Notes under the pieces: model-generated
The model's database searches: none
What the model was told of the DNA's origin: nothing
Seen by the model: only the letters and a program-made list of their open reading frames with translations
NCBI GenBank assembly: GCA_002269645.1
Contig: NIVC01000988.1
Span: forward strand, 310,001-374,000
Direction: 5' to 3'
Length of the DNA stretch: 64,000 bases
DNA from: Macrostomum lignano
Taxonomy: Eukaryota
Position numbers and translations under genes: made by a program
Shown here: in pieces, positions 12,811 to 60,600 of the stretch
Numbering within the stretch: the stretch's first letter is position 1
How the letters are laid out: the number at the start of each line of letters is the position of its first letter

Positions 12811-13149
12811 TATTGGAATTCAAAAGTGAGCTGTACTCAGTGAGAAAAAGTATTTGCAGTCTACTTGCATAGCTCAAACAAAATAGTTCTAAAATTTTAA
12901 AGAAACAAAGCCAGACATTTGTTTACTGTAAGGTAGAAAATCTATAGTATTGAATTGACTGAACTAAAGCCATTGAAATTCAAACAATAGGCCCTACGCT
13001 TTTGTTTGCTATTCAGCGAAACTAAGGATCAAGATTTAGGATAAAATTAAGAGCTCTCAGGAGCGTTAAGAAACTGATCTTTTTAAAATGGATACAGCCT
13101 TTAATGGAGATACACTGAACGACTTCCACTAAAGTGTGACACACCATTT

Positions 13150-17975: not shown

Positions 17976-18007
17976 GCTTGGCTACATGTATAGGATTATT
18001 TCTATCC

Positions 18008-36133: not shown

Positions 36134-36185
36134 GTAAGGCGTTGAGATGATTTCTTATCTCTGGCAATTAAATATAGAGCAAAGT

Positions 36186-39620: not shown

Positions 39621-39696
39621 GTAAGGAATTGATATTGCTGCATAGATTTTGGTAGTGTATTGAACTCCAAACTACTTTAGAAACTGGAATGCACTT

Positions 39697-41780: not shown

Positions 41781-41901
41781 TTCATTATCTTACATCTCTT
41801 ATGCATTTCTAATTTTCCTAAACTATCAATGTATTTCTCTTGCATTCCCTCAAAGTATTCAAGACTTGAATACCTGAAAATTTGACACTGTAAAATTGCA
41901 G

Positions 41902-42136
41902 TTCGTGGCGCATCCTCACTGCCAGCAGCTGCTCGCCGCCCTCTGGTACGACGGCCTGCCCGGATTTCGTCGAAAGCACATGGTGTTCCAGATCGGAATG
42001 ATTGGCACCTTTGCCGGCATATTTCCTGTGCTGGCCATGTTCTACCTACTGGCGCCCCGGTCCAGCCTGGGTCAGAAAATTCGGAAACCGTTTATTAAGT
42101 TTATCTGTCACAGCGCATCTTACCTGCTGTTTCTGG
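41902..42136 (+). CDS. Trpgamma: TRPC channel exon 3
   Basis: ttgcag|TTC...CTGG|gtgagc. [11 protein letters not shown]...[11 protein letters not shown]...[17 protein letters not shown]. Confidence 0.96.
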
Positions 42137-42189
42137 GTGAGCTTAAAGACTGAGATTTAACGACAAAAAATAATAATAAAAAGACACAC

Positions 42190-42480
<291 letters not shown>

Positions 42481-42489
42481 CTCTTACGA

Positions 42490-45400
42490 CTGTCTGTGTG
42501 TTTAGCGGGACCTGAGTTATGTTAATGCGTTACGTGGACCACGCAATTCCGGTTAAAAAATAGAGTCTGTTTTGACAACGCGAAAGGCTAGCTAGGGTTA
42601 TCTTTTTGTTAACTTGACGGAATAGCCAGTTCGGGGAAACTGTGGTGGTTCACTAACTACGTTTTGGGGACCGGGTTAGGTGGACCGCAAAAAAACAGTT
42701 GGTTTAGTTAGACCTCTTTCGTTGTAGAAAATTTATTGCTTTAAACTGTTCTTTTGAACTATTAAAACAGAAATTCTCAAAAAGAACAGATAAAAGGGTT
42801 ACGACGTCATTTAATGAAAATATCCCAAGTTCAAACCAATTTATTTAGCATTACTAATCGGGTTAATCGGGTTAAACAAATGTACGATCGCATTAGTTAG
42901 TTGCGTCGCGTGAATACAAGAAGGTGAATGAAAATAAAGCATTTTGAAAATAAATACAGAATCATATCAAATACTAACTGTAAACTCATTAAAACTAATT
43001 TAGGTCAAAATGTATGCTTCAAATACATGTTAACAAACGTAAGATTCCATTAGTTAAAAAGGTCATCCGAGTACGAGCCTACAAGAAGTTGAAGGGCATT
43101 TTTAATAACGACAAAAGTTACTAAAACTGAAATTAAATTGATTTGACTACATCAGTCCTATTATACTGAATGAGTTGGTGAGCAATCATATGATAAGCCA
43201 ATCATTTTACCGACTTTCATCTTTTCGTTCACGCAGATGATGGATTAATCTTCTTATTTTTTCTACGAAATATTCTCCTGGACCTTCCCTGCCTCCGTGG
43301 TCCGGGACCGCTTCTGTTATTGATCTGTCATTGCCTCTCTCACGAATTTCAGCTTACTCAGCCATCGAATCCACTTTCGTCAGCTCAGCTTCTTTTACAG
43401 TTCGTTTTAACCTTCATCTCGGTGAAACGCAGTCAGTCTCGTCGAGCTCAGGCGAACAAAATCAACCACAGGCTCCTACAAAGGTAGAAAATAAAATTAA
43501 CTGACAATCAAACAGACACAGAAATCTGTTCCAGTTGTGTCTGTAGGTTATGTGGACCACCTCAGACCCAGAGCCTCAAACAGACAGAGAAATCTGTTCG
43601 AGTTGTGTCTGTAGGTGAGGTGAACCACCTTCTGAGAGCCTAAGCCTCAAACAGACTTAGAGAGCTGCTTCAGTTGTGTCTATAGGTTATGTGGACCACC
43701 TAAGAGCCAGAGCCTCAAACAGACAGAGAAATCTGTTCGAGTTGTGTCTGTAGGTTAGGTGGACCAGCTACTGAGAGCCAAAGCCTCAAACAGACTGAGA
43801 GAGCTGCTTCAGTTGTGTCTGTAGGTTATGTGGACCACCTAAGAGCCAGAGCCTCAAACAGACAGAGAAATCTGTTCGAGTTGTGTCTGTAGGTTAGGTG
43901 GACCACCTAAGAGCCAGAGCCTCAAACAGACAGAGAAATCTGTTCGAGTTGTGTCTGTAGGTTAGGTGGACCAGCTACTCCAAAGCACTTCTAGGCGATA
44001 GTCTGAGCCAGGAATCTCCGAGAGACTTTCGTTACACATCCAGATGTTCTGCCTTGATGCTGGACTAGCTCACTTTCTAGGAATCTGTTCTGATTGCATT
44101 CTAACAAACTGAAGCATTCTCGGCACTAAACTTTCTCGGCGGCTCTGAGATCCAGAGCCTCAAACAGACAGAAATCTGTTCGAGTTGTGTCTGTAGGTTA
44201 GGTGGACCAGCTACTCCACAGCACTTCTAGGCGATAATCTGAGCCAGGAGTCTCCGAGAGACTTTCGTTACACATCCAGATGTTCTGCCTTGATGCTGGA
44301 CTAGCTCACTTTCTAGGAATCTGTTCTGATTGCATTCTAACAAACTGAAGCATTTTCTGCACTAAACTTTCTCGGCGGCTCTGAGAGCCAGAGCCTAAAC
44401 AGACAGAGAAATCTGTTCGAGTTGTGTCTGTAGGTTAGGTGGACCAGCTACTCCACAGCACTTCTAGGCGATAATCTGAGCCAGGAGTCTCCGAGAGACT
44501 TTCGTTACACATCCAGATGTTCTGCCTTGATGCTGGACTGGCTCACTTTCTAGGAATCTGTTCTGATTGCATTCTAACAAACTGAAGCATTCTCGGCACT
44601 AAACTTTCTCGGCGGCTCTGAGAGCCAGAGCCTCAAACAGACAGAGAAATCTGTTCGAGTTGTGTCTGTAGGTTAGGTGGACCAGCTATTCTACAGCACT
44701 TCTAGGCGATAATCTGAGCCAGGAATCTCCGAGAGCCTCTCGTTACACATCCAGATGTTCTGCCTTGATGCTGGACTAGCTCACTTTCTAGGAATCTGTT
44801 CTGATTGCATTCTAACAAACTGAAGCATTCTCGGCACTAAACTTTCTCGGCGGCTCTGAGAGCCAGAGCCTCAAACAGACAGAGAAATCTGTTCGAGTTG
44901 TGTCTGTAGGTTAGGTGGACCAGCTACTCCACAGCACTTCTAAGCGATAATCTGAGCCAGGAGTCTCCGAGAGATTTTCGTTACACATCCAGATGTTCTG
45001 CCTTGATGCTGGACTAGCTCACTTTCTAGGAATCTGTTCTGATTGCATTCTAACAAACTGAAGCATTTTCTGCACTAAACTTTCTCGGCGGCTCTGAGAG
45101 CCAGAGCCTAAACAGACAGAGAAATCTGTTCGAGTTGTGTCTGTAGGTTAGGTGGACCACCTTCTGAGAGCCAAAGCCTCAAACAGACTGAGAGAGCTGC
45201 TTCAGTTGTGTCTGTAGGTTATGAGGACCACCTAAGAGCCAGAGCCTCAAACAGACAGAGAAATCTGTTCGAGTTGTGTCTGTAGGTTAGGTGGACCAGC
45301 TACTCCACAGCACTTCTAGGCGATAATCTGAGCCAGGAGTCTCCGAGAGACTTTCGTTACACATCCAGATGTTCTGCCTTGATGCTGGACTAGCTCACTT

Positions 45401-48400
45401 TCTAGGAATCTGTTCTGATTGCATTCTAACAAACTGAAGCATTTTCTGCACTAAACTTTCTCGGCGGCTCTGAGAGCCAGAGCCTAAACAGACAGAGAAA
45501 TCTGTTCGAGTTGTGTCTGTAGGTTAGGTGGACCAGCTACTCCACAGCACTTCTAGGCGATAATCTGAGCCAGGAGTCTCCGAGAGACTTTCGTTACACA
45601 TCCAGATGTTCTGCCTCGATGCTGGACTAGCTCACTTTCTAGGAATCTGTTCTGATTGCATTCTAACAAACTGAAGCATTCTCGGCACTAAACTTTCTCG
45701 GCGGCTCTGAGAGCCAGAGCCTCAAACAGACAGAGAAATCTGTTCGAGTTGTGTCTGTAGGTTAGGTGGACCAGCTACTGAGAGCCAAAGCCTCAAACAG
45801 ACTGAGAGAGCTGCTTCAGTTGTGTCTGTAGGTTATGTGGACCACCTAAGAGCCAGAGCCCTAAACAGACAGAGAAATCTGTTCGAGTTGTGTCTGTAGG
45901 TTAGGTGGACCAGCTACTCCACAGCACTTCTAGGCGATAATCTGAGCCAGGAATCTCCGAGAGCCTCTCGTTACACATCCAGATGTTCTACCTCGATGCT
46001 GGACTAGCTCACTTTCTAGGAATATGTTCTGATTGCATTCTAACAAACTGAAGCATTCTCGGCACTAAACTTTCTCGGCGGCTCTGAGAGCCAGAGCCTA
46101 AATAGACAGAGAAATCTGTTCGAGTTGTGTCTGTAGGTTAGGTGGACCACCTTCTGAGAGCCAAAGCCTCAAACAGACTGAGAGAGCTGCTTCAGTTGTG
46201 TCTGTAGGTTATGAGGACCACCTAAGAGCCAGAGCCTCAAACAGACAGAGAAATCTGTTCGAGTTGTGTCTGTAGGTTAGGTGGACCAGCTACTCCACAG
46301 CACTTCTAGGCGATAATCTGAGCCAGGAGTCTCCGAGAGACTTTCGTTACACATCCAGATGTTCTGCCTTGATGCTGGACTAGCTCACTTTCTAGGAATC
46401 TGTTCTGATTGCATTCTAACAAACTGAAGCATTCTCGGCACTAAACTTTCTCGGCGGCTCTGAGAGCCAGAGCCTCAAACAGACAGAGAAATCTGTTCGA
46501 GTTGTGTCTGTAGGTTAGGTGGACCAGCTACTCCAAAGCACTTCTAGGCGATAATCTGAGCCAGGAATCTCCGAGAGCCTCTCGTTACACATCCAGATGT
46601 TCTGCCTTGATGCTGGACTAGCTCACTTTCTAGGAATCTGTTCTGATTGCATTCTAACAAACTGAAGCATTCTCGGCACTAAACTTTCTCGGCGGCTCTG
46701 AGAGCCAGAGCCTCAAACAGACAGAGAAATCTGTGTCGAGTTGTGTCTGTAGGTTAGGTGGACCAGCTACTGAGAGCCAAAGCCTCAAACAGACTGAGAG
46801 AGCTGCTTCAGTTGTGTCTGTAGGTTATGTGGACCACCTAAGAGCCAGAGCCCTAAACAGACAGAGAAATCTGTTCGAGTTGTGTCTGTAGGTTAGGTGG
46901 ACCAGCTACTCCACAGCACTTCTAGGCGATAATCTGAGCCAGGAATCTCCGAGAGCCTCTCGTTACACATCCAGATGTTCTACCTCGATGCTGGACTAGC
47001 TCACTTTCTAGGAATATGTTCTGATTGCATTCTAACAAACTGAAGCATTCTCGGCACTAAACTTTCTCGGCGGCTCTGAGAGCCAGAGCCTCAAACAGAC
47101 AGAGAAATCTGTTCGAGTTGTGTCTGTAGGTTAGGTGGACCACCTTCTGAGAGCCAAAGCCTCAAACAGACTGAGAGAGCTGATTCAGTTGTGTCTGTAG
47201 GTTAGGTGGACCAGCTTCTCTACAGCAATTGAGTTGCAGGCCTTGCAGCTAGCTACTTTGAGATCATCAAACGAAACTCACTTTTCTGGACTCGGTGTCG
47301 ACGGATTTGCGAGCAGACTGATGATTTTCACCAGGCGATGCGGCTTCTTCGATTTCGCAGTGGCTTTTTGCGACTGTGTTTTTTTAGTTTTTATTTTAGG
47401 CTTGGCGTCCTTTTTTGCGGGTCATCATATCTTGGTTGTAGATTACAGTTTTTGGCACAATAAATTTATATATGGATGAAACTTGGAGTAAGGATTAACA
47501 TTAGACCTATTAAGTATAAAAAAACCGTTCTAATCTATACAATTGCAATCCTTTAGAGTTGTATAGTATGGATTATAAGTACTTTCTTTTAAACTGTCTG
47601 TGTCTGGTCTCACTACGCCATGGTTTACGTGGACCACCCGCTTAGACATTATATATCCCTCTCTCCACTGTCTTACCTTCAGAACGCTTGCGGGTTTCCT
47701 ATTGGCTGCGGTCGGTCCCATTGTTGGGGTGGATCTATCCTCCTAAGTGTTAACCAGCCAAATATAGAAAGGGAGGTCTGTCTGTCTGTCTGTTCCAACC
47801 CTATACTCCTGCACATGTGTTTACGAGGACCAAACAGACAGTGAGTGTTAGGCTGACTGTTAATGCGTTCTTAGTTTTACTGGGACCGCAATCAAGACCC
47901 GATCGCTAGCTAAAAGGCCCTTCTTAATTGCGTCCTCTTGATCAAATCTTTTGCATGTACATGTATGAATTGTCCTTTTCAATTAGGTAAATTGCATCTT
48001 CAACTTTGCACTTGAAAGGCTGCAGCTTAGGATCTTCTTCTTCCAACATTGGAGGAGGATAGAACAGGATATCCCATAGTGTTTAGGATAGAATTGGCAA
48101 GCACTTAATTCATGAAGTTGCTATTTTCTTCTTGTGTAATGGTAGAGCCTCAGAAATTCGCATTTACACAGTGTGGCTATCAAGGACCACTGGGAGTTCT
48201 TGAGAAGTCATTGAAGAATACTATTTAAGCTTCACTTAAATATCTTTCTTGTCTCGGAGTCTTTATCGTTTGATCTGGTTAGCGAATTGGATTTCTTTAC
48301 GTTGGTGTCTTACTCTGTGAGTCTGTGCTCAGAGTACGATACCGGAATTGCTGGAACTGAGCTAATTAAATGGAGTTTAAAGTTTACTGTATCAAATTCA

Positions 48401-48944
48401 TTTCGCATACGAGGTTTCAGAATTTTTAATTAACCTGCGCACCTACTTGAATGTCAAAGAACTGAACGCATATTGTTTTAAAGCCAGTAGCGGTCATAAT
48501 ATGATGCCAACATAGCCCTTTGTTCGTAAGGTAATGATCTGTAAAAAATTCAGTTTTGCATCGAATCTATGCTTAATAACTGCTATACACAAACAGACAC
48601 AAACAGACACAAACAGACACAAACAGACACAAACAGACGATTTTCGAAAAATTTTCTAAAATTTTTCGGTTTACGTGGACCAGACTCGCTCGGTTTAGGT
48701 AGACCAGGCTGGAGGTCCAGCTAAACTGAAATGCAAATAACTTTGGAAAAATCCATGCTAGACATCCCAAAATTGCTTAAGCCTTTCTTGACCCGCCTGA
48801 CATTAATGTGAGATCCTCATCAACGTCTTAACCCCACCAGAGACAAAATTATTTGGTGGTCCACCTAAGTGGTCTACCTACACCGGTTGGTCCAGCTAAC
48901 GAGGCTACTGAACTTCCAAAAAGTCCACGTAAACACACAGACAG
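42490..48944. mobile_element. Putative TIR-bounded non-autonomous element inserted in a (GACA)n tract
   Basis: Left CTGTCTGTGTGTTTAGCGGGAC versus right GTCCACGTAAACACACAGACAG (19 of 22 inverted match). GTGGACCA motifs occur near both ends and in the internal satellite. No TSD found. Confidence 0.45.
43500..47215 (+). repeat. Composite satellite: about 238-bp units interspersed with about 62-bp subunits (GAGCCAGAGCCTCAAACAGACAGAGAAATCTGTTCGAGTTGTGTCTGTAGGTTAGGTGGACCA)
   Basis: Direct inspection; unit spacing measured at 44385, 44622 and 44860. Confidence 0.93.
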
Positions 48945-48948
48945 TAGA

Positions 48949-49922
<974 letters not shown>

Positions 49923-49945
49923 ACGTTCAGTCCCTAAATTTTCAG

Positions 49946-50068
49946 GCTTTCTTGTGCTGGCGGCGATTCGCATTGAGGACATTCTGATGAACACGCTGGA
50001 ACAGAAGTTGCAAGAGCGAGGTCCCGAGCCGTCAATTGTGGAATGGATCATTGTAGTCTATGTGATGG
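49946..50068 (+). CDS. Trpgamma: TRPC channel exon 4 (absent from the ORF track)
   Basis: ttttcag|GC TTT...ATG G|gtgcgt, phase 1/1. [11 protein letters not shown]...[19 protein letters not shown]. Confidence 0.93.
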
Positions 50069-50232
50069 GTGCGTCTGTCGTGAGGGACATATTTGTATAT
50101 ATATTGTAGTTAAAAGCTGTTGTAAAAGCAAAAATTTTATTGGAAGCCTAAAGGACACCTGCAATATTTGATGTCTTGTTTACTGTCCCAACGTCTTCGT
50201 GGATGTTCCGGTCTCTTAGTGGGTGTACGTGT

Positions 50233-50797
50233 ATCTTGGTTGGCGCCCCTGTCTCTTGGTTGGCGCCCCTGTCTCTTGGTTGGCGCCCCTGTCTCTTGGT
50301 TGGCGCCCCTGTCTCTTGGTTGGCACCCCTGTCTCTTGGTTGGCGCCTCTGTCTCTTGGTTGGCGCCCCTGTCTCTTGGTTGGCACCCCTGTCTCTTGGT
50401 TGGCGCCCCTGTCTCTTGGTTGGCACCCCTGTCTCTTGGTTGGCGCCCCTGTCTCTTGGTTGGCGCCCCTGTCTCTTGGTTGGCACCCCTGTCTCTTGGT
50501 TGGCGCCCCTGTCTCTTGGTTGGCGCCCCTGTCTCTTGGTTGGCACCCCTGTCTCTTGCGCCCCTGTCTCTTGGTTGGCACCCCTGTCTCTTGGTGGGCA
50601 CCCCTGTCTCTTGGTTGGCGCCCCTGTCTCTTGGTGGGTGTCCCTGTCTCTTGGTTGGCGCCCCTGTCTCTTGGTTGGCACCCCTGTCTCTTGGTGGGTG
50701 TCCCTGTCTCTTGGTGGGTGTCCCTGTCTCTTGGTTGGCGCCCTTGTCTTTTGGTTGGCGCCCCTGTCTCTTGGTTGGCGGCCCTGTCTCTTGGTTG
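50233..50797 (+). repeat. 20-bp minisatellite (TTGGTTGGCGCCCCTGTCTC)n
   Basis: Direct inspection. Confidence 0.96.
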
Positions 50798-51756
50798 CGC
50801 CTATAACGAAAACATCACTGCTTTTAGTAAAAAACGCAAGTACATTTCTGACGCAGGATAATAGGAAAACGATACCAAGTGATGGAAAGCTCCCATAAAA
50901 AATTAATTTAGGATATCTGTCAGCCTTATGATATACATGTATGATCTCAGCAGATGGCATCAGTAATTCTGCTATTCCATATGAAAGCAAATGACTCTGC
51001 CTCGAAAATAGTGATTGGAAAGTCACGGGAGCAGAGCGCAGAGTCAGCTATAGATAAAGATGGTAAGCAGGCCACAGGTGGAGGCTGTGCCGAGGTAACC
51101 TTACCCCATGCTTTTGCGCGAATGCTTTCAGACTGCAAGGTAAAAAAAACACGGAAGCAGCAGGAGCAAATTTTAATGCACGCCCGAAACATCGATTCGC
51201 CTTTCAGTCGAGTCTTTTATCGACATCTTTCTGCGCTTGAATAATTCAGTCATGAGGTTGACATCAGGCTTTTTGACCCGCAGTATTTTCAAAGCCGCTG
51301 CTGTAGACATGAGGAGCAGCAAGCATAAAAGCGAATCGCCGGCTTGCTTGTTTAGGAAATGCATCCCAAATCTCATGCTAGAATCGACTCCCCGGCTTTC
51401 GACAGCTAAGCAGACGAGTCACGACAGGGGGAGCAGCTGCGGGCTTGTTCTGAGCCTTGGGCCGAATTCACGAAATGCCAGATTATTTGCCGTATGGGGG
51501 ATTCTGACTGGGGGATTTTCGCTTGAAAGGGAAGAGGGATTTGAAAATGCTGGACTTAATTAAACCCTGTGGCTGCAAGAACCTGGGCGTGGCTTCGGCT
51601 GTCTTTTAAAACAGTCAGCCTCACTAACTCATCCGTGACCCCTCGTCTCGTTGTTCATGCTCTGCCTGCAACAGCTTATCGATGGCATGCTTTCTGATTA
51701 ATTAATTTCATAATGTTCATTGTGACAAGTCAACTATGAATCTCTTACTACTGCAG

Positions 51757-51896
51757 GCTTTGTATGGCAGGAGGTGAAACAGCTGTGGAGCGAAGGTGCC
51801 AAGGCGTACGTGACAGACATGTGGAACTTGCTGGATTTCGCTACCAACTCTTTGTACATCGCAACCATCACGTTGCGGGGAGTGGCCTGGTATCTG
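51757..51896 (+). CDS. Trpgamma: TRPC channel exon 5
   Basis: ctgcag|GC TTT GTA TGG...CTG|gtgcgt. FVWQEVKQLWSEG...WNLLDFATNSLYIATITLR. Confidence 0.95.
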
Positions 51897-51981
51897 GTGC
51901 GTGCTGCTAAAGTTTTTGTCAAACCATAAAATGCGGGTAGATGCTGTCCCGTGGGATCGTCGAACGGTTGTTGGGAAGACT

Positions 51982-52641
51982 GGGACTGAGACATTACAGT
52001 AGACTGAGACTGAGACACTATAGTAGACTGGGACTGAGATACTACAGTAGATTGGGACTGAGACACTACAGTAGATTGGGACTGAGACACTACCGTAGAT
52101 TGGGACTGAGATACTACAGTAGATTGGGACTGAGACACTACAGCAGACTGGGACTGAGACACTACCGTAGATTGGGACTGAGATACTACAGTAGACTGAG
52201 ACTGAGACACTACAGTAGACTGAGACTGAGACACTACAGTAGATTGGGACTGAGATACTACAGTAGATTGGGACTGAGAAACTACAGTAGACTGAGACTG
52301 AGACACTACAGTAGACTGAGACTGAGACACTACAGTAGATTGGGACTGAGACACTACAGTAGATTGGGACTGAGACACTACCGTAGATTGGGACTGAGAT
52401 ACTACAGTAGATTGGGACTGAGACACTACAGTAGACTGGGACTGAGACACTACCGTAGATTGGGACTGAGATACTACAGTAGACTGAGACTGCTACACTA
52501 CAGTAGATTGGGACTGAGACACTACAGTAGATTGGGACTGAGACACTACAGTAGATTGGGACTGAGACACTACAGTAGATTGGGACTGAGACACTACAGT
52601 AGATTGGGACTGAGACACTACAGTAGATTGGGACTGAGACT
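51982..52641 (+). repeat. 24-bp minisatellite (GGGACTGAGACACTACAGTAGATT)n
   Basis: Direct inspection. Confidence 0.95.
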
Positions 52642-52670
52642 ATCATGACAATCATATCATTGATCACCAG

Positions 52671-53044
52671 GTGCGCCTGGGAAGCGGTATGAAGAATGTC
52701 CACCGCGAGAACTGGGACGCTTACGATCCAACGCTGATATCCGAGTGCCTGTTCGCCACGGCCAACATCTTCTCGATGCTGAAGCTGGTGTACATATTCA
52801 CTGTCAATCCGCACTTAGGACCGTTGCAAATCTCTCTCGGACGAATGCTGTCCGACATTCTCAAATTCCTGTTTGTGGTTGTTCTAGTACTAGTCAGCTT
52901 TGCCTGCGGCTTCAACCAGCTCTACTGGTTCTACGCGTACGAGAGGAATAAATATTGTCAGGATAATCGCTTTTATTTCGGCATCACTGGTGACGCTTTG
53001 GACAAATATCAGTATTGCGTAACCAGGGGCAGAACCTTCTCCAA
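52671..53044 (+). CDS. Trpgamma: TRPC channel exon 6 (S4-S5)
   Basis: caccag|GTG...TCCAA|gtgagt. [25 protein letters not shown]...[18 protein letters not shown]...[12 protein letters not shown]. Confidence 0.96.
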
Positions 53045-53135
53045 GTGAGTAATAGTCCTAATTGATGGACTGGCTGATTTAAGCCTGCATTTTGGGCCTC
53101 AACTTTCCAATTGGCTGGTATGAATTTATGGCACC

Positions 53136-53610
53136 CCCCTTAGACTACCACTCACTCCAATGAAATAGGTCACGTGACAATGAAATGAAGAGGCACCTCC
53201 TCAAACGAAATCCCCCCCTAGACTACCACTAACTCTAATGAAATAGGTCACGTGACAATGAAATGAAGAGTCGCCTCCTCAAACGAAATGCCCCCCCTAG
53301 ACTACCACTCACTCTAATGAAATAGGTCACGTGACAATGAAATGAAGAGTCGCCTCCTCAAACGAAATTCCCCCCCCCCCTAGACTACCACTAACTCCAA
53401 TGAAATAGGTCACGTGACAATGAAATGAAGAGTCGCCTCCTCAAACGAAATGCCCCCCCCCTAGACTACCACTCACTCTAACGAAATAGGTCACGTGACA
53501 ATGAAATGAAGAGTCGCCTCCTTAAACGAAATGCCCCCTCTAGACTACCACTCACTCTAATGAAATAGGTCACGTGACAATGAAATGAAGAGTCGCCTCC
53601 TCAAACGAAA
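53136..53610 (+). repeat. About 80-bp tandem repeat, 6 copies, each with palindromic GTCACGTGAC
   Basis: Direct inspection. Confidence 0.92.
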
Positions 53611-54371
53611 CGGCGCCTTAAATCAAAGATCAAAGGCGGCATTTCATTTCAACTCAAAGTGTTCATTTCAAATAGCTAGATGCATAACAAGGCGGACGGT
53701 TTCTTTTAATGAAAGTTTTCTGCTACAGATATGAACTAAAAAAGAGGTTTACCAAATTATGAAGAGAAAAGCATGGTTAGCATGGTAAGCCTTCGGCTCT
53801 TGGTAACACAACTCATTTTTTCACCCAAATGTTCGAACTGTATTGACGTTTCTTTATTGTTTTTAACTTACTCGTAGTTATTCGTTAAATTCTAATTGAA
53901 ATTGCGTGCTTCGCTTGAACTGTTACGGGTATCATAGTCATGCAACTTATGGTTTAGCAATAAGTCAACTCTAACACACACTTGCGTCAACGCGGGCAGG
54001 CAGGCAATTCAATATGGCCAAACGCTTGCGGTTTATCACCGTTGACTATCTCTTAAGCAGCTAAGTCAGGAGTGCCAATTCAGGAAATGAAATACATGTA
54101 GGTGGTCGAATATTGAAGCCTTATCTAAGTTTATTAAATCATTAGTCAAAGTAAAACTTTTCAATGTTTATACAATTTTAAAGCGTAGTCAACTGATACT
54201 TGGAGAGTTCAAAGTCAGTCTTTGCTTGCCTATTTGACGAAAATGATGCACTGTGACGCATGTAGGGCGATTAGAAAAATTGTCCATTTACCATAACTAA
54301 CAATTAATATTGCTCCACAAAAACGTACAGAACATGGATTAATCTATCGCTCAATATTCCTAATTTGACAG

Positions 54372-54472
54372 TCTGTTCGAGATCACCCAGACGCTATACT
54401 GGTCAGCCTACGGTTTAATAGACCTGTCCAACACCGACCTGGAGTATCAGCACTCATTCACGCAGTTTGTCG
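54372..54472 (+). CDS. Trpgamma: TRPC channel exon 7 (pore helix)
   Basis: tttgacag|T CTG TTC...GTC G|gtgagt. NLFEITQTLYWSAYGLIDL...FTQFVG. Confidence 0.93.
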
Positions 54473-54934
54473 GTGAGTGCGGGCTATCAGCATACAGTAA
54501 AACAAAATCGATACAAGCAATGGAGAATTTGTCCACCGAAACACGTTTTAGCGGTATATGCTTCTGGCATTGGATGTTAAAACATCAATTTACATTATAA
54601 AAAAGGAACTGTTCTGATTGGAAAACAATCAGCACACATGTTACGCACAGAAATCCATGTTTAAATTAAAAAGAATCACAGACGCCAAGTACAACAGACA
54701 GAATACTTTTTTACAGCATACGTGTGAATAAAATTGTGAAATAATCATTGATGCACATTCAGAAGCCTAGTGACGAGTTCTATTTTTACAGTACTTGATC
54801 GAGCTGAACTATCAGAAACAATTAAAGATACGTCTGATATCTACTAAAAAAGATTATGTTAATTAATGTTATAAATAACAAAAATTTTAAAGAAACCCCG
54901 CTATCGTAAGAGCAATGATGCTGAATTGTTGCAA

Positions 54935-55229
54935 TCAAATTTTCCTGCTAAAAGTAGCGGCCCCTACACCTCTGGCTGGTAGAGGTGGTAAATTTCTTTC
55001 GCTAAAGTCGATGGGCTCTTCGTAGACACCTGAATCGGGTCTGCCGGGCCGATCACTTTGTTCCTGTCCGTACTGCATTTGCTGCCGCTCTGTGCTGGTG
55101 ATGTAGGCCGGGTTGGTGCAGTTTGGCAGCTGCGGGTACTGCCCCTCCACCCCAGAAGTTCCAAGCGGCAGGTCCAGGCCGATCCCGTCGCGATTATAGC
55201 TCACCCCGCTGACTAAAATTGGCCGCCGC
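54935..55229 (-). CDS. Nested Delta-like (C2-DSL) gene, exon 7 (cytoplasmic tail, stop)
   Basis: Acceptor ccaaag|G, phase 2, gives RRRPILVSGVSYNRDG...NCTNPAY...GVYEEPI...PPLPARG...SRKI*. Confidence 0.75.
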
Positions 55230-55377
55230 CTTTGGCGTTGGGAGGCGAGTTACAAGTACGCATAAGGGATACGCACGTAGACATGCACACACTAGTATCG
55301 AAAATCAGACGGAGCTACTCTGCTCCATTACTAAATTATTGGGAACCGACTCAAAATAACAACTATGGTATTCTTAC

Positions 55378-55717
55378 CTTCTTCGTCTTCTTGAGCAGAG
55401 CAGTACAGAAGTTACGGCGGTGATGATCCCAATCACGACCAGCATCAGTATGACCACCAGCACCAGATCCAGTCTGGAACTTAAAATTTGCACAATCGAT
55501 GGCTGCACGTCTGAGGCTTGATTAACTTCGCCACTGTTCATGCTGACACTCTGCGAAGTACGAGTACTTGTGGTGCTTTGTAGCAGGGAGCTGGCCGACT
55601 TAGACTCTGTAGATACCGACGGACTTGTTCCGATTGCAGCGGTTGATGAAGTCACTGTTGTTTTAGTTGTTGCTTGAACTGTTGTTGCACTGGTTGCCGC
55701 TTCAGGATTGCAAGTTT
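55378..55717 (-). CDS. Nested Delta-like gene, exon 6 (last DSL Cys, Ser/Thr stalk, transmembrane helix)
   Basis: tttttccag|AA ACT TGC...AGA AG|gtaaga. T/S-rich stalk, LVLVVILMLVVIGIITAVTSVLLC, then poly-Arg stop-transfer. Confidence 0.85.
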
Positions 55718-56185
55718 CTGGAAAAATAAAACAAATCAATAGAATCTAGGGGGTGTCTGTAGGTGGTTTTAGGGAAGGATTTTAAAGCAGGCATCGTGAA
55801 GTGGCTTGGACACTTGGAAACGATAAGTGCGGATGAACTAGTTCGGTATTTGATAATGACAAAAGGCAAACAGGAGAACGTTGTGCGCTTCTTGCAATTC
55901 TGTCCAAATTGTGCTATCCTGAGCTTTAAACTGACGTGAAATCCACATTTTGTCCAGCGAATCCCCTGGATGGGATGATGTTTTGTTTGCGTTCCTAGTC
56001 AACTGGCCTGAAGAATTCACTTTTTGAGGCTCTACGAGTATTTCAGCGCTTAAGTCAACAATACATTTGCCAATTTTAGAAAACCTGTCGCTTTTCAATG
56101 CCTGTACCTGAAGGAAACTATTAAAAAGTACTTTCTGTAACTGATCGAGACACTTAAAAATATGTAAGACAATATTATTACTAAC

Positions 56186-56313
56186 CTGGCAATGAGCAAA
56201 CTAATATTCCGTCAGAATTGCAACTCCATCCGGATTGTACAGAGCGACAAAGTTTGTCACATTTTTGGCCATAGAAGTTCAAGTCGCACCGGTGCCAAAC
56301 AGACAGTCGCATT
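56186..56313 (-). CDS. Nested Delta-like gene, exon 5 (DSL domain)
   Basis: tacacag|A ATG...CCA G|gttagt. RLSVWHRCDLNFYGQKCDKLCRSVQSGWSCNSDGILVCSLP has DSL-type C-x8-C-x3-C spacing with the F/YYG motif. Confidence 0.85.
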
Positions 56314-56393
56314 CTGTGTAATTTCAGCGACAGTGGTGTCTCATTCTTATTCTAAAAACTTTAATAAAGCTTTGTAGTATTGATCTGACTCAC

Positions 56394-56584
56394 TTGATCG
56401 ATATCGGAGCTGGTGCCAAAGAACCCAATTCAAGTTTTCTGATCCTGTCCGAGTCGGGATCGAAGGGTTCGCCGTGCAGAAACGGTCTCGGTAGGTCATC
56501 CAGTTGCTGGAAGAAATCAGCAATTTCGTCTCTGTCTAAATCGAACAAGCACTCCTTGACCTTGATGCCGATGGTGATTGGAAA
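56394..56584 (-). CDS. Nested Delta-like gene, exon 4 (end of C2/MNNL-like domain)
   Basis: ttttttag|TTT CCA...ATC AA|gtgagt; 191 nt, open. Confidence 0.8.
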
Positions 56585-56678
56585 CTAAAAAAATGCAGTT
56601 ATTATTTTCAAGTTAACTTGATTTACATGTATTAATTGATTTCAGCAAGGTCAGGGCACTGGCACAAAAATCACTTAC

Positions 56679-56796
56679 TATGTAAGGGGAATGCATCCGA
56701 TAACGCAACGGATTTGGTAGCGCCGTGCCAATTGTGTTCTCAAACAAAATATGATTTTTGTTGTTGAAACAGTCAGACTTTTTCTCGTCCAAACCC
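56679..56796 (-). CDS. Nested Delta-like gene, exon 3
   Basis: ttcacag|G GGT...TAC ATA|gtaagt. DC...LPNPLRY resembles the C-x-n-NPI segment of Delta N-termini. Acceptor choice is inferred from frame. Confidence 0.7.
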
Positions 56797-56870
56797 CTGT
56801 GAATTGGCAGTTCAACTCTAAGAAATAAACGCAAAATTTAACAAAGGCTTCCATTGGCTTTTGGGCTTAC

Positions 56871-56995
56871 CAGCCGCCTCTAACTTCAATGATGAACTTC
56901 GGGTCGCAAGGTCGGCCGCTGTCGCAGTTGGCGTGATCAGCTTTCAAGCCAAGATGGTTTTCAAATTCGTCGAATTTCACAAAGAATGTTCCATT
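56871..56995 (-). CDS. Nested Delta-like gene, exon 2 (start of C2/MNNL-like domain)
   Basis: ttctcag|AAT GGA...GGC TG|gtaagc. NGTFFVKFDEFENHLGLKADHANCDSGRPCDPKFIIEV resembles Delta G.FE.....F.N..G......CC...C...F.V. Confidence 0.82.
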
Positions 56996-57100
56996 CTGAG
57001 AAGCAAGCGGTAGTTACATGCGATTCTCAAGTCATGATATCTTGCTCAAAGATTGTACCGTTATATCTAAATAATTCAATTTTCTTGCAAATGTACTCAC

Positions 57101-57169
57101 TGCTTCAACGATGGATATTAAAGGAGTGGAGAGCAGAAACGCTAAACGCAATAAATTTGTAGTAACCAT
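57101..57169 (-). CDS. Nested Delta-like gene, exon 1 (signal peptide)
   Basis: ATG...GAA GCA|gtgagt. MVTTNLLRLAFLLSTPLISIVEA with a VEA cleavage-type motif. The seven exons total 1266 nt (421 aa plus stop). Confidence 0.78.
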
Positions 57170-57838
57170 ATCGCTAGCATATAGTGTTGAAATGTAGAAT
57201 TTTCTCAATTTTTGTCACCAAGGCGTTTTCTTATATGCCTGCTGATATTTATTAATTGGCGTCTTGACTATCGCTTCGTAATAGCAGATTTGGCTTAGCG
57301 ATATCAAATGCCAGACTTATCCACAACTAGGTTTATAACACTTCTTAGCAGCCGCAAGGCTGTATAGGGCCAACGTACGCAACTTCGTGGCTTTTCTATG
57401 ACATCAGTCGCTACAGTTTCAAAGGCAAGCTGAGAGGGTTTAAAATTGGTTTAGCTAAAAGCTATTATTGGACTGACTGAACTTAGCGAAGTGACGAATC
57501 AAAATTTCGTCCCTCCAATCAAAGGTTCCTCTATTTTTTGCGACGGTAAAATAATGTAATTTAAGAACGTAATGATTTTACAAATTCCATACACTAAAAA
57601 TGGTTTGTCGGTATCTATCTTAAGCTCTAAGCACGAAGATTGCACAGTTGCACAGGAAGAAATTTACCGAACCAAAAAAACCAGGTGCGAGCGGAAAATG
57701 CATGGAAAAGCATCAACTTGAACTCAAAGACGGGAATGCTTCGTTTTTTTCGGGTGCTAATCAGCAGTAATAAGCGGTAGATTTAAACAAATTCTATTTT
57801 TAGAAATCAAACTTTCAACTGCCATTTAAATTCCGCAG

Positions 57839-57933
57839 GCAAACTCATGTTCGGAGCATTCTGCGCCATCACTTTTATTGTGCTGCTCAATATGCTGATC
57901 GCGATGATGAATTGCAGCTATGAGTACATTGCG
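57839..57933 (+). CDS. Trpgamma: TRPC channel exon 8 (S6)
   Basis: ttccgcag|GC AAA...GCG|gtaaga. GKLMFGAFCAITFIVLLNMLIAMMNCSYEYIA. Confidence 0.95.
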
Positions 57934-58324
57934 GTAAGACGCCTTTGCTTTGTTTTGTATGCACTTATAAGTCCTAATCTGTATCGGTTCTAATGGATTT
58001 ACTGGCTTTTCATTAGCTTGTAAAAACCTTCGTGATCTCGATGCTAGGTCATGTCCAAAGTACGTCGTTGTAAAAATTGGTAAAATCTAGGGTTCTATTG
58101 AATAATCGGTAATATCTAAGGTTGTAATAAAGAATACAGCATATTTAGGATCCTACTAAAAGTACATGTAGTTGGCAGTAAAAAGGATCATATCCAGAGT
58201 CTAATCCTGTGTCCTACGAGTACTAAAGATATCGTGCGCAAGGTCCTGATGAATCAAGGTCATGCAGGTATCTAGGATCACAATTAAAATATCACTTCCG
58301 GGATCCCAGTGAAAAAATTGGTGA

Positions 58325-58699
<375 letters not shown>

Positions 58700-59159
58700 T
58701 GAGCTGCGAAAGAATTCATGATATTAGTATCAACAATTGGAAGTCATCAAGACCGAGTTCTATTGCACAATACAAAATCTAGGCGAAAATTCACGTGACT
58801 GTGGGTCTTACAACGATTTAAGCACACTAAGCTATTATAAGAATCGTGTGTTTTTGCTGGAAGACTTCATTTATGTTATTTATACCCGTTTTGGCCGCAC
58901 CGAATAAGTCCATGGTCCGATTTTAAAACGCTTATTTGTCCCGGCCAAAAAAACGATCAAAATAAATGAGACAGACGAATGAGCCGCGGGAAAGTACTTA
59001 AAGAAATACATGTTCAAGCAACAGATTACAATGCTTTAGAATAGCGAACAGTTGTTATGTTAAACAGTTTCTTTGGCTTGATCAGCTCAATCAAAGTAGA
59101 CAATCACGCGAAATTTGGTCTAGCCCGCACAGCTCCACATTGGAACCCCAAATCACGGA

Positions 59160-59370
59160 ACTCATCAGAGTTCTCTTCTCTTCGCACGTCGGCTCTCATT
59201 GAATTCCACGTCCTTCCAGAGGCTCCATGGCTTTCCGCATTGGTTGAACAAGTAGCGTTGCAGCATGCTGTAAATAATCCTTCAGCGTAGAAGCGCCATA
59301 GCGATCACCACTTTTATTTCGGATCTCTAAGATAAACTACTTAAGGTATCGCGCTTGCTCAACTGGGATA
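59160..59370 (-). pseudogene. Crypton-like (tyrosine-recombinase DNA transposon / DUF3504-related) fragment
   Basis: FILEIRNKSGDRYGASTLK /frameshift/ IIYSMLQRYLFNQCGKPWSLWKDVEFNESRRAKRREL* resembles the F..EIR.K.G..Y...TL......LQRYL......D.EF..SR pattern of animal Cryptons (recalled pattern, not searched). Confidence 0.5.
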
Positions 59371-59807
59371 GTCGGTTGCGGGTGCCAATGGCAAGTCACT
59401 CAAGACAGCTTCGACTTCAGCAAGACTAAGTGGTTCAAAGCCGACGCAGTCAACATCACTCATGTTGAAAATATTGTAACTCGAAAATGTCACAAAAATT
59501 AAAGAGATTTAGTAGAGACAACCACTCACTCTTAAATACCTACATGTAACGCAGTTATTTTCGTCAACTGCATCAAACCAACATTTCTCTATGTTTAAAA
59601 CTTACATTCTCTGACAGTAAAAACAGTTCTGGGCCACTGTACACCCTTTGTGATTGCACGCCCGTGTACATATCCGTGTGCGTATGCGTACTAAGAGGCC
59701 AGGGGCCCGTACTACGAGCGGTCTACTGTATTGTACTGTACTGTGGGGTCTTCAATCTCAAAAGAAGGTTTCTAATCAGTACGCTACGTACGCATCAATA
59801 CTTGCAG

Positions 59808-59991
59808 AACGTTATGCGAGACCTTGTCAAGCGCTACCTCATGGCCAGAACGAGAGCCGACGAGAAGCAGGGCGTCACGGAGGATGACTTGAACGAGATC
59901 AAAGGCGACATTTCCTCATTTCGCTTTGAACTGTTGGAGATTCTGCGCACCAATGGCATGAAGACGCCGGCTTATACTCAGCAGAGATCGA
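59808..59991 (+). CDS. Trpgamma: TRPC channel exon 11 (C-terminal coiled coil)
   Basis: cttgcag|AAC...TCG A|gtgagt. VMRDLVKRYL...GVTEDDLNEIKGDISSFRFELLEIL. Confidence 0.95.
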
Positions 59992-60074
59992 GTGAGTGGC
60001 GGGGTCTGGGGTGGCTGGGAGACTGCGGATTTTGCGTGAACTTGGAAGAAGAGAGCTGGGCTGGTTATGGGAGA

Positions 60075-60600
60075 ATTTGGATTCTTAGAATTCGAGAAAA
60101 GAGAGGACGGATTCTTAGAAAGAAAGGCCGGATTCTTAGAAAGAGAGGGCGGATTCTTAGAAAGAGAGGGCGGATTCTTAGAAAGAGAGGGCGGATTCTT
60201 AGAAAGAGAGGGTGGATTCTTAAAAAGAGAGGGTTGATTCTTAGAAAGAGAGGGTGGATTCTTAAAAAGAGAGGGTTGATTCTTAGAAAGAGAGGGTGGA
60301 TTCTTAAAAAGAGAGGGTTGATTCTTAGAAAGAGAGGGTTGATTCTTAGAAAGAGAGGGTGGATTCTTAAAAAGAGAGGGTTGATTCTTAGAAAGAGAGG
60401 GCAGATTTTTAGAAAGAGAAGAAAGAAGAATTTTAGGAAAAAGAGGACAAATTCTTAGAGTACCTGGTAGATTCCTGGTAGATATAGGGTAGATTCTTAG
60501 AATTCAAAGTAAGAGAAGGAGGATTCTTAGAATTCAAGAGTTTCAAGGAAAGAGAGCGGTTTCTTATAGAATTCGCGGAAAGAGAGGGCAGAATCGGAGA
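60075..60600 (+). repeat. 20-bp minisatellite (GGATTCTTAGAAAGAGAGGG)n
   Basis: Direct inspection. Confidence 0.92.

What the first reader, a model, noticed from the sequence alone, without database searches (positions are those of the whole stretch)
54935..57169. Hidden antisense gene in a TRPC intron encodes an EGF-less Delta-like (C2 + DSL) membrane ligand
Seen: seven exons join in frame through canonical GT-AG sites into 421 aa. The parts are a signal peptide, a C2/MNNL-like N-terminus (GTFFVKFDEFENHLG...CD...CDPKF), a six-Cys DSL domain (C-x8-C-x3-C-x8-C-x7-C-x5-C, shorter than canonical), then directly a Ser/Thr mucin-like stalk, a TM helix and a tail of about 100 aa. Established: canonical Delta/Serrate ligands are C2-DSL-EGF repeats, and EGF1-2 contribute to Notch binding. 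Inference: a stripped-down Notch ligand, cis-inhibitor or decoy, or a Notch-independent receptor. It is nested antisense in a sensory-type TRP channel gene, which could couple or mutually exclude their expression. Divergent DSL proteins are known in nematodes and spiralians, so novelty needs checking.
Basis: partly seen in the sequence, partly recalled or inferred. Interest (0 to 1): 0.8.

Follow-up and report, generated by a model that had tools for sequence, protein, structure and literature searches.

The report
EGF-less Delta-like gene inside TRPC intron
A real gene of the flatworm Macrostomum lignano, already annotated but never studied, sits backwards inside an intron of a TRPC ion-channel gene and encodes a stripped-down relative of the Notch ligand Delta that keeps the receptor-binding head but swaps the usual EGF rod for a mucin-like stalk.

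Summary
Seven GT-AG exons on the minus strand (57169-54935) join into 421 aa, identical to GenBank PAA73901.1 (BOX15_Mlig006308g1, Macrostomum lignano; UniProt name "DSL domain-containing protein"). That annotation was built from RNA-seq, so the gene is not hidden.

The protein has a signal peptide, a ~150-aa N-domain, a shortened six-Cys DSL, an 80-aa Ser/Thr stalk, one TM helix and a 103-aa tail.
- **DSL:** passes Pfam's cut-off (26.7 vs 24.2 bits).
- **N-domain:** misses Pfam MNNL but matches a Delta MNNL/C2 profile (hhalign P=5.5e-4; 0 of 300 shuffles reach the score).
- **EGF:** no EGF exon in any intron.

The host gene is a TRPC channel (TRP_2, Ion_trans, ankyrin, EWKFAR).

New here: the protein belongs to a family of at least three subfamilies, found only in M. 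lignano. A 41%-identical paralog lies antisense in the same intron of a paralogous TRPC gene (TRPC dS ~1.75), so the nesting is old.

Function is untested. The DSL Notch-contact face is only partly kept, and the tail has one lysine but conserved VYExP and PPLPAR motifs. An EGF-less Delta is already known in a sponge (AmqDelta4). I rate it a new variant of a known kind, of moderate interest.

The parts
57101..57169 (-). Exon 1: start codon and signal peptide (aa 1-23, MVTTNLLRLAFLLSTPLISIVEA)
   Evidence: The donor is GTGAGT. The product is identical to PAA73901.1.
56871..56995 (-). Exon 2: start of the MNNL/C2-like domain (NGTFFVKFDEFEN...CDSGRPCDPKF...)
   Evidence: Paralog P0004 has the same exon boundaries. 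This stretch carries the strongest part of the hhalign match to MNNL.
56679..56796 (-). Exon 3: middle of the MNNL/C2-like domain (includes SDC and NPL motifs)
   Evidence: The acceptor used lies 26 nt downstream of another AG that would create a TGA stop.
56394..56584 (-). Exon 4: C-terminal half of the MNNL/C2-like domain (FPITIGIKVKEC...LPRPFL...)
   Evidence: Exon boundaries are conserved in P0004.
56186..56313 (-). Exon 5: last strand of the N-domain and most of the DSL domain. The DSL is aa 177-213, at 56288-56186 plus 55717-55710.
   Evidence: Pfam PF01414 scores 26.7 bits against a cut-off of 24.2, over aa 177-208. All six Cys are invariant against 16-20 canonical Deltas.
55378..55717 (-). 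Exon 6: sixth DSL Cys, the Ser/Thr-rich stalk (aa 214-293, 55709-55470), the TM helix (aa 293-318, 55472-55395) and the poly-Arg stop-transfer
54935..55229 (-). Exon 7: cytoplasmic tail and stop codon. It carries NPAY (aa 363-366), SGVYEEP (55033-55013) and PPLPAR (54988-54971).
   Evidence: The VYExP and PPLPAR motifs are conserved in the 41%-identical paralog.
55718..56185 (-).
   Evidence: Pfam finds nothing in the sense-frame translations. No EGF-type six-Cys pattern occurs in any sense frame across the gene plus or minus 1 kb, in the window locus, its homeolog or the paralog locus.
54473..57838 (+). Intron of the host TRPC gene that contains the whole Delta-like gene in antisense
   Evidence: The donor is G|GTGAGT at 54472/54473 and the acceptor is CGCAG|GC at 57838/57839, joining ...FTQFVG to KLMFGAF... 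in frame.
35441..60455 (+). Host TRPC channel gene (approximate span). Exons were recognised at about 35441-36142, 38979-39629, 41878-42150, 51726-51926, 52638-53045, 54364-54472, 57839-57932, 58325-58699 and 59550-60455.
   Evidence: Pfam on the concatenated exon translations gives TRP_2 at 100.7 bits, Ion_trans at 79 bits, and Ank repeats. The EWKFAR TRP box is present. No gene is called here in the GenBank record.

Best explanation
Shown: this is a real, transcribed, protein-coding gene of Macrostomum lignano. It encodes a type I membrane protein of the Delta/Serrate/LAG-2 (DSL) superfamily. Its ectodomain is only the two-module head of a Notch ligand: a divergent MNNL/C2 beta-sandwich followed by a trimmed DSL domain. 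An ~80-residue Ser/Thr-rich stalk replaces the EGF repeats. The gene belongs to a small, fast-evolving family with at least three subfamilies. Two of them are shown to lie antisense in the same intron of paralogous TRPC channel genes, and the third lies antisense next to a TRPC exon, so the nested pair was duplicated as a unit long ago.

Inferred mechanism: the C2-DSL head is held away from the membrane by the stalk, which is probably O-glycosylated, and binds Notch. In the DLL4-Notch1 complex, as I recall it, all contacts come from these same two modules.

The tail has a single, penultimate lysine, so Mindbomb/Neuralized-type ubiquitin-driven trans-activation is unlikely. The protein more likely acts in one of two ways. 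It may be a DLL3-like cis-modulator or competitor of Notch. Or it may be a ligand that is internalised and signals through its own tail, using the conserved VYExP (pYxxP-type) and PPLPAR (PxxPxR SH3-type) motifs, plus an NPAY in this subfamily.
For: Gene reality:
- The model is identical to PAA73901.1.
- GenBank annotation of NIVC01 derives from a StringTie/TACO RNA-seq transcriptome plus TransDecoder (PMC5730564).
- Against the homeolog copy, exons differ by 1.4% with no indels, while introns differ by 3.4% with 37 gap positions.
- Intron positions are shared with the 41%-identical paralog.

DSL domain:
- Pfam score is above the gathering cut-off.
- The best PDB sequence hits are Drosophila Delta and DLL4, through the DSL region.
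- All six Cys are invariant in alignments with canonical Deltas.

MNNL/C2 domain:
- hhalign of the family N-domain alone against 23 canonical MNNL domains scores 28.1 (P=5.5e-4) and is collinear over residues 1-137 vs 1-157.
- 300 column shuffles give a mean of 12.8, sd 2.5 and maximum 21.4; the reversed sequence scores 12.3.
- Three of the four MNNL Cys columns are shared.
- An AlphaFold model built on a mixed alignment (pLDDT 59.7, pTM 0.62) has Jagged, DLL, Delta and Serrate C2-DSL structures as its top 24 Foldseek hits, followed by generic C2 domains.

No EGF.

Family and nesting.

Tail:
- One Lys in 103 residues; the motifs are conserved across paralogs.
- DLL3 has no lysines in its intracellular domain, is not ubiquitylated and signals poorly. 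Cis-inhibition does not need the ubiquitin ligases. A lysine-free Delta carrying an NPxY signal is active (PMC3241720).

Precedent: AmqDelta4 is MNNL-DSL-TM without EGF and is co-expressed with Notch (PMC3482393).
Against: - Pfam MNNL gives no hit even at E<=10.
- AlphaFold on the family-only alignment failed (pLDDT 37). The better model used an alignment containing canonical Deltas, so its fold match is not independent evidence.
- The conserved Notch-binding face of the DSL (human Jagged1 F199, R201, R203, D205, F207; PMC3415683) reads L, R, V, S, W here (alignment). The FGH loop and the GWxG loop are deleted.
- No binding, expression or phenotype data exist.
- No relative outside M. lignano was detected, so constraint is shown only among paralogs.
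- The homeolog dN/dS is roughly 0.3, my own estimate from 18 differences, which is not strong constraint.
Confidence: 0.5

Rival explanations
1. It is a Notch-independent surface receptor or adhesion molecule. The C2-DSL scaffold is inherited from a Delta ancestor but has been re-used for another partner or for lipid binding. Signalling would run inward through the conserved tyrosine and proline motifs of the tail.
For: - The DSL Notch face is largely replaced, and two DSL loops are deleted.
- The ectodomain evolves fast: paralogs are 41% identical, while the host TRPC paralogs are 89% identical across the same duplication.
- The best-conserved non-cysteine features between subfamilies are the tail motifs RP[DE]S[GD]VYE[ET]P and PPLPAR.
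- The tail has almost no lysine.
Against: - The head keeps exactly the two modules that contact Notch in canonical ligands.
- R201 and two hydrophobic or aromatic positions of the Notch face are kept, and paralog P0004 keeps FCRP.
- An EGF-less Delta in a sponge is co-expressed with Notch.
- No alternative partner is known.
Confidence: 0.35
2. It is an artefact or a decaying gene. Either the model is incomplete and has lost its EGF exons, or it is a chance string of ORFs, or it is a pseudogenised Delta fragment inside the intron.
For: - Two of the acceptors used lie downstream of stronger-looking AGs that would truncate the protein.
- Other M. lignano gene models (P0002, P0003) skip exon 3 and the DSL exon.
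- The TRPC host gene is itself missing from the GenBank annotation at this locus.
Against: - The 421-aa product comes from an RNA-seq-derived annotation.
- A homeolog copy keeps the full ORF with no exon indels.
- A 41%-identical paralog with three gene copies keeps the same architecture, cysteines and intron positions.
- No EGF pattern occurs in any intron of three loci.
- The TM helix and tail follow directly, in frame.
Confidence: 0.04
3. The N-terminal domain is a CUB domain rather than an MNNL/C2 domain, as the UniRef names of the alternative models (P0002, P0003: 'CUB domain-containing protein') suggest.
For: The only support is the automatic UniRef names. Both folds are beta-sandwiches of similar size.
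Against: - Pfam reports no CUB match at E<=10.
- The domain aligns significantly and collinearly with the MNNL profile.
- Its cysteines fall in MNNL cysteine columns.
- It sits directly in front of a DSL domain, as MNNL always does.
- The models that carry the CUB name lack exon 3, so their N-domain is incomplete.
Confidence: 0.02

Closest known systems
AmqDelta4 of the sponge Amphimedon queenslandica (GU385843; PMC3482393)
   Same: Both have a signal peptide, an MNNL domain, a DSL domain, no EGF repeats, a TM helix and a cytoplasmic tail. Both are one member of a lineage-specific expansion of Delta-like genes.
   Different: AmqDelta4's MNNL is recognised by standard domain software, while this one is not. 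This protein has a long Ser/Thr stalk, a DSL shortened by two loop deletions, and tail motifs of its own. Orthology is very unlikely (sponge vs flatworm), so independent loss of the EGF repeats is the simpler reading. I did not compare the two sequences.
Canonical Delta/DLL1/DLL4 (PDB 7alk, 4xbm, 4xlw, 5mvx)
   Same: Both have a C2/MNNL domain followed by a DSL at the N-terminus of a type I membrane protein. The DSL cysteines, the [FY]YG motif and the CR motif are shared, and so are three MNNL cysteine columns and the NP[IL] motif.
   Different: - It has no EGF repeats, where the Delta family has 5-9.
- The FGH and GWxG loops of the DSL are deleted.
- R203 and D205 of the Notch face are lost.
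- The tail is almost lysine-free and has no recognisable Mib/Neur docking motif.
- Identity to canonical heads is about 20%.
DLL3 (divergent vertebrate Delta, cis-acting)
   Same: Both are degenerate in the DSL region and have a lysine-free or nearly lysine-free intracellular domain. This suggests a ligand that does not trans-activate by ubiquitin-driven endocytosis (PMC3241720; PMC12166595).
   Different: DLL3 keeps six EGF repeats and is Golgi-retained (the latter from my own knowledge). This protein has no EGF repeats. There is no sequence relationship beyond the superfamily.
C. elegans DSL proteins (LAG-2, APX-1, DSL-1 and others)
   Same: Both are divergent, lineage-expanded DSL proteins that lack the DOS motif of EGF1-2.
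   Different: The nematode proteins keep at least one EGF repeat (one in DSL-1; PMC3415683). This protein has none.
Unnamed MNNL-(DSL)x7-TM gene on ENA contig ERZ28747376:ctg11026 (locus L004)
   Same: Both have an MNNL domain, then DSL, then a TM helix and a tail with no EGF repeat. It was found through DSL similarity to this protein.
   Different: It uses seven tandem DSL domains as the extracellular rod instead of a mucin-like stalk. The organism is unknown.

Membership tests
DSL (Delta/Serrate/LAG-2) ligand superfamily | A DSL domain with six cysteines that scores above the family threshold | tested here: met
   Pfam PF01414 scores 26.7 bits against a cut-off of 24.2, E=7e-6, over aa 177-208. 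All six Cys are invariant against canonical Deltas. Paralog P0004 scores only 17.2 bits.
DSL (Delta/Serrate/LAG-2) ligand superfamily | An N-terminal MNNL / C2 domain directly before the DSL | tested here: met
   This is met only at profile-profile level. Pfam MNNL gives no hit. hhalign against 23 canonical MNNL domains scores 28.1, P=5.5e-4, and 0 of 300 shuffles reach that score. Cysteine columns are shared. The AlphaFold model on a mixed alignment matches C2-DSL structures but is not independent evidence, and the family-only model failed.
DSL (Delta/Serrate/LAG-2) ligand superfamily | EGF-like repeats after the DSL (16 in Jagged, 5-9 in Delta, at least 1 in nematode ligands) | tested here: not met
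   The DSL is followed directly by the Ser/Thr stalk and the TM helix. Pfam finds no EGF domain in the protein or in the intron translations. There is no EGF cysteine pattern in three loci.
DSL (Delta/Serrate/LAG-2) ligand superfamily | Type I membrane topology (signal peptide, single TM helix, cytoplasmic tail) | tested here: met
   There is an N-terminal hydrophobic leader ending in VEA, and one hydrophobic segment at aa 293-318 (Kyte-Doolittle score up to 3.2) followed by R7. No dedicated signal-peptide predictor was available.
Functional Notch ligand | The conserved Notch-binding face of the DSL (human Jagged1 F199, R201, R203, D205, F207) | tested here: inconclusive
   The aligned residues are L, R, V, S, W: one identical, two conservative and two charged residues lost. 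P0004 keeps F and R only.
Functional Notch ligand | Lysines or E3-ligase docking motifs in the intracellular domain, for Mib/Neur-dependent trans-activation | tested here: not met
   The tail has one Lys (K420) in 103 residues. I did not run a formal search for Mib or Neur docking motifs. This is comparable to DLL3.
Functional Notch ligand | Physical binding to Notch EGF11-12 and an effect on Notch signalling | not testable with these tools
   This needs a binding assay, a reporter assay or RNAi.
CUB domain proteins (UniRef name of the alternative models) | A match to the CUB profile | tested here: not met
   No CUB family appears in the Pfam output at E<=10.
TRPC channels (host gene) | A TRP_2 domain, ankyrin repeats, six-TM Ion_trans domain and the EWKFAR TRP box | tested here: met
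   TRP_2 scores 100.7 bits, Ion_trans scores 79 bits, and Ank_2/Ank are found. EWKFAR followed by LPAPFN is present at 58325-58699.

The most novel reading that the evidence does not exclude
The TRPC/Delta-like nested pair may be a conserved functional unit. Antisense transcription through the channel's pore-encoding region could make expression of the EGF-less Delta-like protein and of the TRPC channel mutually exclusive, or tightly ordered, within a cell lineage. That would link a Notch-type fate decision to acquisition of a channel identity. The Delta-like protein would then be a new class of bilaterian Notch modulator: a C2-DSL head on a mucin stalk that is endocytosed or signals through SH2/SH3-type tail motifs instead of ubiquitin.
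Probability: 0.07. Interest if true: 0.7.

Novelty: new variant of a known kind. Interest (0 to 1): 0.4.

Why it matters
If the protein binds Notch, it would show that in a bilaterian the C2-DSL head alone, carried on a non-EGF stalk, is enough to make a Notch ligand or cis-inhibitor. It would also give a natural minimal ligand for studying what EGF1-2/DOS and intracellular ubiquitylation contribute.

If it does not bind Notch, it would be an example of the Delta head being re-used for another partner.

The family is fast-evolving and has been co-inherited with TRPC paralogs across an old duplication. M. lignano supports transgenesis and RNAi, so the question of nested-gene regulation can be tested directly.

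The gene itself is not a discovery, because it is already in GenBank and UniProt.

Tried and rejected
1. Naive joining at the best-looking acceptors of exons 3 and 5 gives a TGA or a frameshift. Only the downstream AGs give the 421-aa ORF.
2. AlphaFold on the five-sequence family alignment gave pLDDT 37, so that model was not used.
3. A word-indexed search with the family alignment returned only the two truncated M. lignano models and was uninformative.
4. A full HMMER scan of 1.84 billion representatives with the ectodomain found no N-domain relative outside M. lignano. It found only DSL-level hits to unnamed multi-DSL proteins.
5. A metagenome contig scan with the family alignment found no relative.
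6. hhalign against only four canonical MNNL domains was weak (P=0.0066). It improved with 23.
I re-ran it without them.
8. A literature search for the gene id found nothing, and a search for M. lignano Notch/Delta work found nothing specific.
9. An exact look-up of the third-subfamily model P0009 found no contig. Its TRPC neighbourhood could therefore only be inferred from the antisense-TRPC tail of P0010.
10. The CUB reading was rejected.
Full report

I read 54500-57600 and translated the minus strand in three frames. I then located the splice landmarks and assembled exons.

Joining at the most pyrimidine-rich acceptors fails. At exon 3 it creates TG+A = TGA, and at exon 5 it shifts the frame. 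Using the next AG downstream at both places gives a clean ORF of 1266 nt, or 421 aa plus a stop codon. The exons are 57169-57101, 56995-56871, 56796-56679, 56584-56394, 56313-56186, 55717-55378 and 55229-54935. All six introns are GT-AG.

- a hydrophobic leader ending in VEA
- the N-terminal motifs GTFFVKFDEFENHLG, CDSGRPCDPKF
- six DSL cysteines spaced 8, 3, 8, 7, 5
- an 80-residue stalk with 44% Ser/Thr
- one strong hydrophobic helix (aa 293-318) followed by seven arginines
- a 103-residue tail

**2. The gene is not hidden.**

A protein search returned a 421-aa protein that is 100% identical over its full length. It is 'hypothetical protein BOX15_Mlig006308g1 [Macrostomum lignano]' (PAA73901.1), which UniRef names 'DSL domain-containing protein'. 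It lies on contig NIVC01000988.1 of assembly GCA_002269645.1, and the window is bases 310001-374000 of that contig.

The GenBank annotation of this assembly was not made ab initio. It is a genome-guided transcriptome built from RNA-seq with StringTie and TACO, cut at trans-splice and poly(A) signals, with ORFs called by TransDecoder (PMC5730564).

Two UniRef-only models of near-identical copies (P0002, P0003) skip exon 3 and the DSL exon. They remove the centre of the N-domain, so I take them for mis-predictions.

**3. Domains.**

*DSL.* Pfam gives DSL (PF01414) at 26.7 bits, above the curated cut-off of 24.2, for aa 177-208. It gives no MNNL, EGF or CUB match even at E<=10. The best PDB sequence matches are Drosophila Delta (7alk) and human DLL4 (5mvx), through the DSL.

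*N-domain, profile test.* To test the C2/MNNL claim I verified canonical sequences against the PDB and retrieved Delta heads from diverse animals. I then compared a profile of the family N-domain alone (aa 24-176, with the DSL removed) with a profile of canonical MNNL domains.
- With four canonical sequences, hhalign gave P=0.0066.
- With 23 it gave a score of 28.1, P=5.5e-4. The alignment is collinear over 1-137 vs 1-157 and pairs GxFxhxhxxFxN, C..C..F.h, the third Cys, NP[IL], and the strand hxhxIxhW/K.
- 300 column-shuffled versions of the family alignment gave a mean of 12.8, sd 2.5 and maximum 21.4. The reversed alignment scored 12.3.
- In a MAFFT alignment with canonical heads, three of the four MNNL cysteine columns and all six DSL cysteines are invariant.

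*N-domain, structure models.* AlphaFold on the family alone failed (pLDDT 37). With 16 canonical heads added it gave an all-beta model (pLDDT 59.7, pTM 0.62). The top 24 Foldseek hits of that model are Jagged2, DLL1, DLL4, Delta, Jagged1 and Serrate C2-DSL structures (E from 1e-8 to 1e-6, TM about 0.5), followed by generic C2 domains. That model is steered by its alignment, so I count it as consistent, not independent.

*Overall.* The head is a divergent MNNL/C2 plus DSL. The DSL is shortened by deletion of the 'FGH' loop between Cys3 and Cys4 and of the 'GWxG' loop between Cys5 and Cys6.

**4. No EGF repeats.**

Pfam finds nothing in the sense-frame translations of that intron. A search for an EGF-type six-cysteine pattern, in all three sense frames across the gene plus or minus 1 kb, finds nothing in the window locus, its homeolog locus or the paralog locus. 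The sixth DSL cysteine, the stalk and the TM helix all lie in one exon.

**5. The host gene.**

The + strand exons around the gene carry textbook TRPC sequences. Pfam on their concatenation gives TRP_2 (100.7 bits), Ion_trans (79 bits) and ankyrin repeats. The TRP box EWKFAR is at 58325-58699.

The Delta-like gene lies wholly inside the intron 54473-57838. That intron joins ...FTQFVG to KLMFGAF..., the exons on either side of the pore region. The TRPC gene is not called in the GenBank record at this locus.

**6. Family and age of the nesting.**

A full HMMER scan of 1.84 billion representative proteins with the ectodomain found full-head relatives only in M. lignano.
- *Paralog group.* One group is 404 aa (P0004 = Mlig032942, with Mlig019093 and Mlig014464) and is 41% identical across the ectodomain. 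It has the same architecture, the same cysteines, a shorter Ala/Pro/Gln linker, and a tail sharing RP[DE]S[GD]VYE[ET]P and PPLPAR.
- *Third group.* A third group is known only from partial models (P0007, P0009, P0010).
- *Homeolog.* P0017 is the homeolog of the window gene. Against it, exons differ by 1.4% with no indels, and introns by 3.4% with 37 gap positions.
- *Intron positions.* Those around exons 2 and 4 are the same in P0004.

*Nesting in the other loci.* In the homeolog locus (L002) and the paralog locus (L003), tblastn with the window's TRPC exons shows the same arrangement. In L003, the TRPC exons homologous to 54364-54472 and 57839-57932 lie at 16061-15954 and 9531-9436 on the opposite strand. 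They bracket the Delta-like gene at 10001-14578, and the record there does call an Ion_trans gene. The C-terminus of the third-group model P0010 is the antisense translation of the TRPC '[11 protein letters not shown]' exon (78% over 32 aa). That copy also lies antisense next to a TRPC exon.

*Age and rates.* The TRPC paralogs differ by dS about 1.75 and dN 0.068 over 270 codons (89% amino-acid identity). The nested pair was therefore duplicated as a unit long ago. Since then the Delta-like protein has changed several times faster than its host.

**7. How it most likely works.**

*Shown.* The head consists of the two modules that make up the receptor-binding end of Notch ligands. It is carried on a mucin-like stalk, in a type I membrane protein.

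*The Notch face.* The conserved face of the DSL that is needed for both trans-activation and cis-inhibition is F199, R201, R203, D205, F207 in human Jagged1 (PMC3415683). It reads L, R, V, S, W here (alignment). That is partial conservation, so Notch binding is plausible but not assured.

*The tail.* It has one lysine in 103 residues. DLL3 has no lysine in its intracellular domain, is not ubiquitylated and signals poorly. Cis-inhibition does not require the E3 ligases. A lysine-free Delta fused to an NPxY endocytic signal is active (PMC3241720).

The tail has NPAY (aa 363-366, this subfamily only). It also has the motifs conserved across subfamilies, VYExP and PPLPAR. From general knowledge, these fit pYxxP SH2-type and PxxPxR SH3-type docking sites.

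*My best reading (confidence about 0.5).* It is a Notch-binding modulator that acts in cis, or as a ubiquitin-independent ligand. The main rival (0.35) is a Notch-independent receptor that re-uses the scaffold. An artefact or pseudogene (0.04) and a CUB domain (0.02) are essentially excluded.

**8. Comparison with what is known.**

Canonical ligands are MNNL-DSL-EGFn, and even the nematode DSL-1 keeps one EGF (PMC3415683).
- *Described precedent.* An EGF-less MNNL-DSL-TM Delta is already known in the sponge Amphimedon: AmqDelta4, which is co-expressed with Notch in larval ciliated cells (PMC3482393; PMC10970066).
- *Second case found here.* An unnamed gene on an ENA contig has an MNNL domain, seven tandem DSL domains, a TM helix and a tail.

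The architecture is therefore a recurrent variant and not a new category. I found no description of such a protein in flatworms, nor of this gene.

**9. Verdict.**

The structural interpretation is supported. 'Hidden' is wrong. The functional ideas and the TRPC-coupling idea are untested. I rate it a new variant of a known kind, with moderate interest (0.4). The most useful new facts are the paralog family and the ancient, conserved nesting in TRPC genes.

Noticed in passing
window 30263-32253 (+): There are ORFs of a P-element-like transposase (Pfam Tnp_P_element at 71.5 bits, TNP-like GTP-binding insertion domain at 116.6 bits) just upstream of the TRPC gene. The ORFs are split across frames, so the element may be degraded or may contain introns.
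   Followed up: partly
window 8487-10760 (-): Exons of a nucleotide-sugar transporter gene (Pfam Nuc_sug_transp at 74.9 and 22.8 bits) lie on the minus strand.
   Followed up: partly
window 1-3000; 11800-14000; 16500-18700; 42100-42500; 48800-50000; 50150-50800: Several long tandem-repeat or satellite arrays show up as repeated ORF translations. One has a unit of about 161 bp, present in both orientations at 1-3000. Short-unit arrays translating as DRQT/CLSV lie inside TRPC introns. These repeats may be why the TRPC gene was dropped from the GenBank annotation, which excluded transcripts overlapping repeats.
   Followed up: no
L004 (ENA ERZ28747376:ctg11026) 2184-5122 (+): An unknown eukaryote has a gene with an MNNL domain, seven tandem DSL domains, a TM exon and a tail containing GDGVYSTID, with no EGF repeat. 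A second MNNL-coding ORF lies downstream at 6227-6646. It is another EGF-less Delta-like architecture.
   Followed up: partly
window 52724-52921 (-) and protein P0010: The C-terminus of the M. lignano model P0010 (third DSL subfamily) is the antisense translation of a TRPC exon (78% identity over 32 aa). The model is therefore mis-extended, and this shows that the third subfamily also lies antisense beside a TRPC paralog.
   Followed up: yes
window ~56822 and 56351 (-): At exons 3 and 5, an AG with a stronger polypyrimidine tract lies 26 and 38 nt upstream of the acceptor actually used. Using either one gives a premature stop. This could allow unproductive splice variants.
   Followed up: partly
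window 54935-55377 vs L002: Intron 6 and exon 7 (the tail) are 100% identical between the two homeolog copies, whereas the ectodomain exons differ by 2-3%. This may reflect gene conversion or stronger constraint on the tail.
   Followed up: no
L002 1-694 and L003 1-4032: An alpha/beta-hydrolase (Abhydrolase_1) gene lies on the same side of the Delta-like/TRPC pair in both the homeolog and the paralog locus, so the shared synteny extends beyond the nested pair.
   Followed up: no
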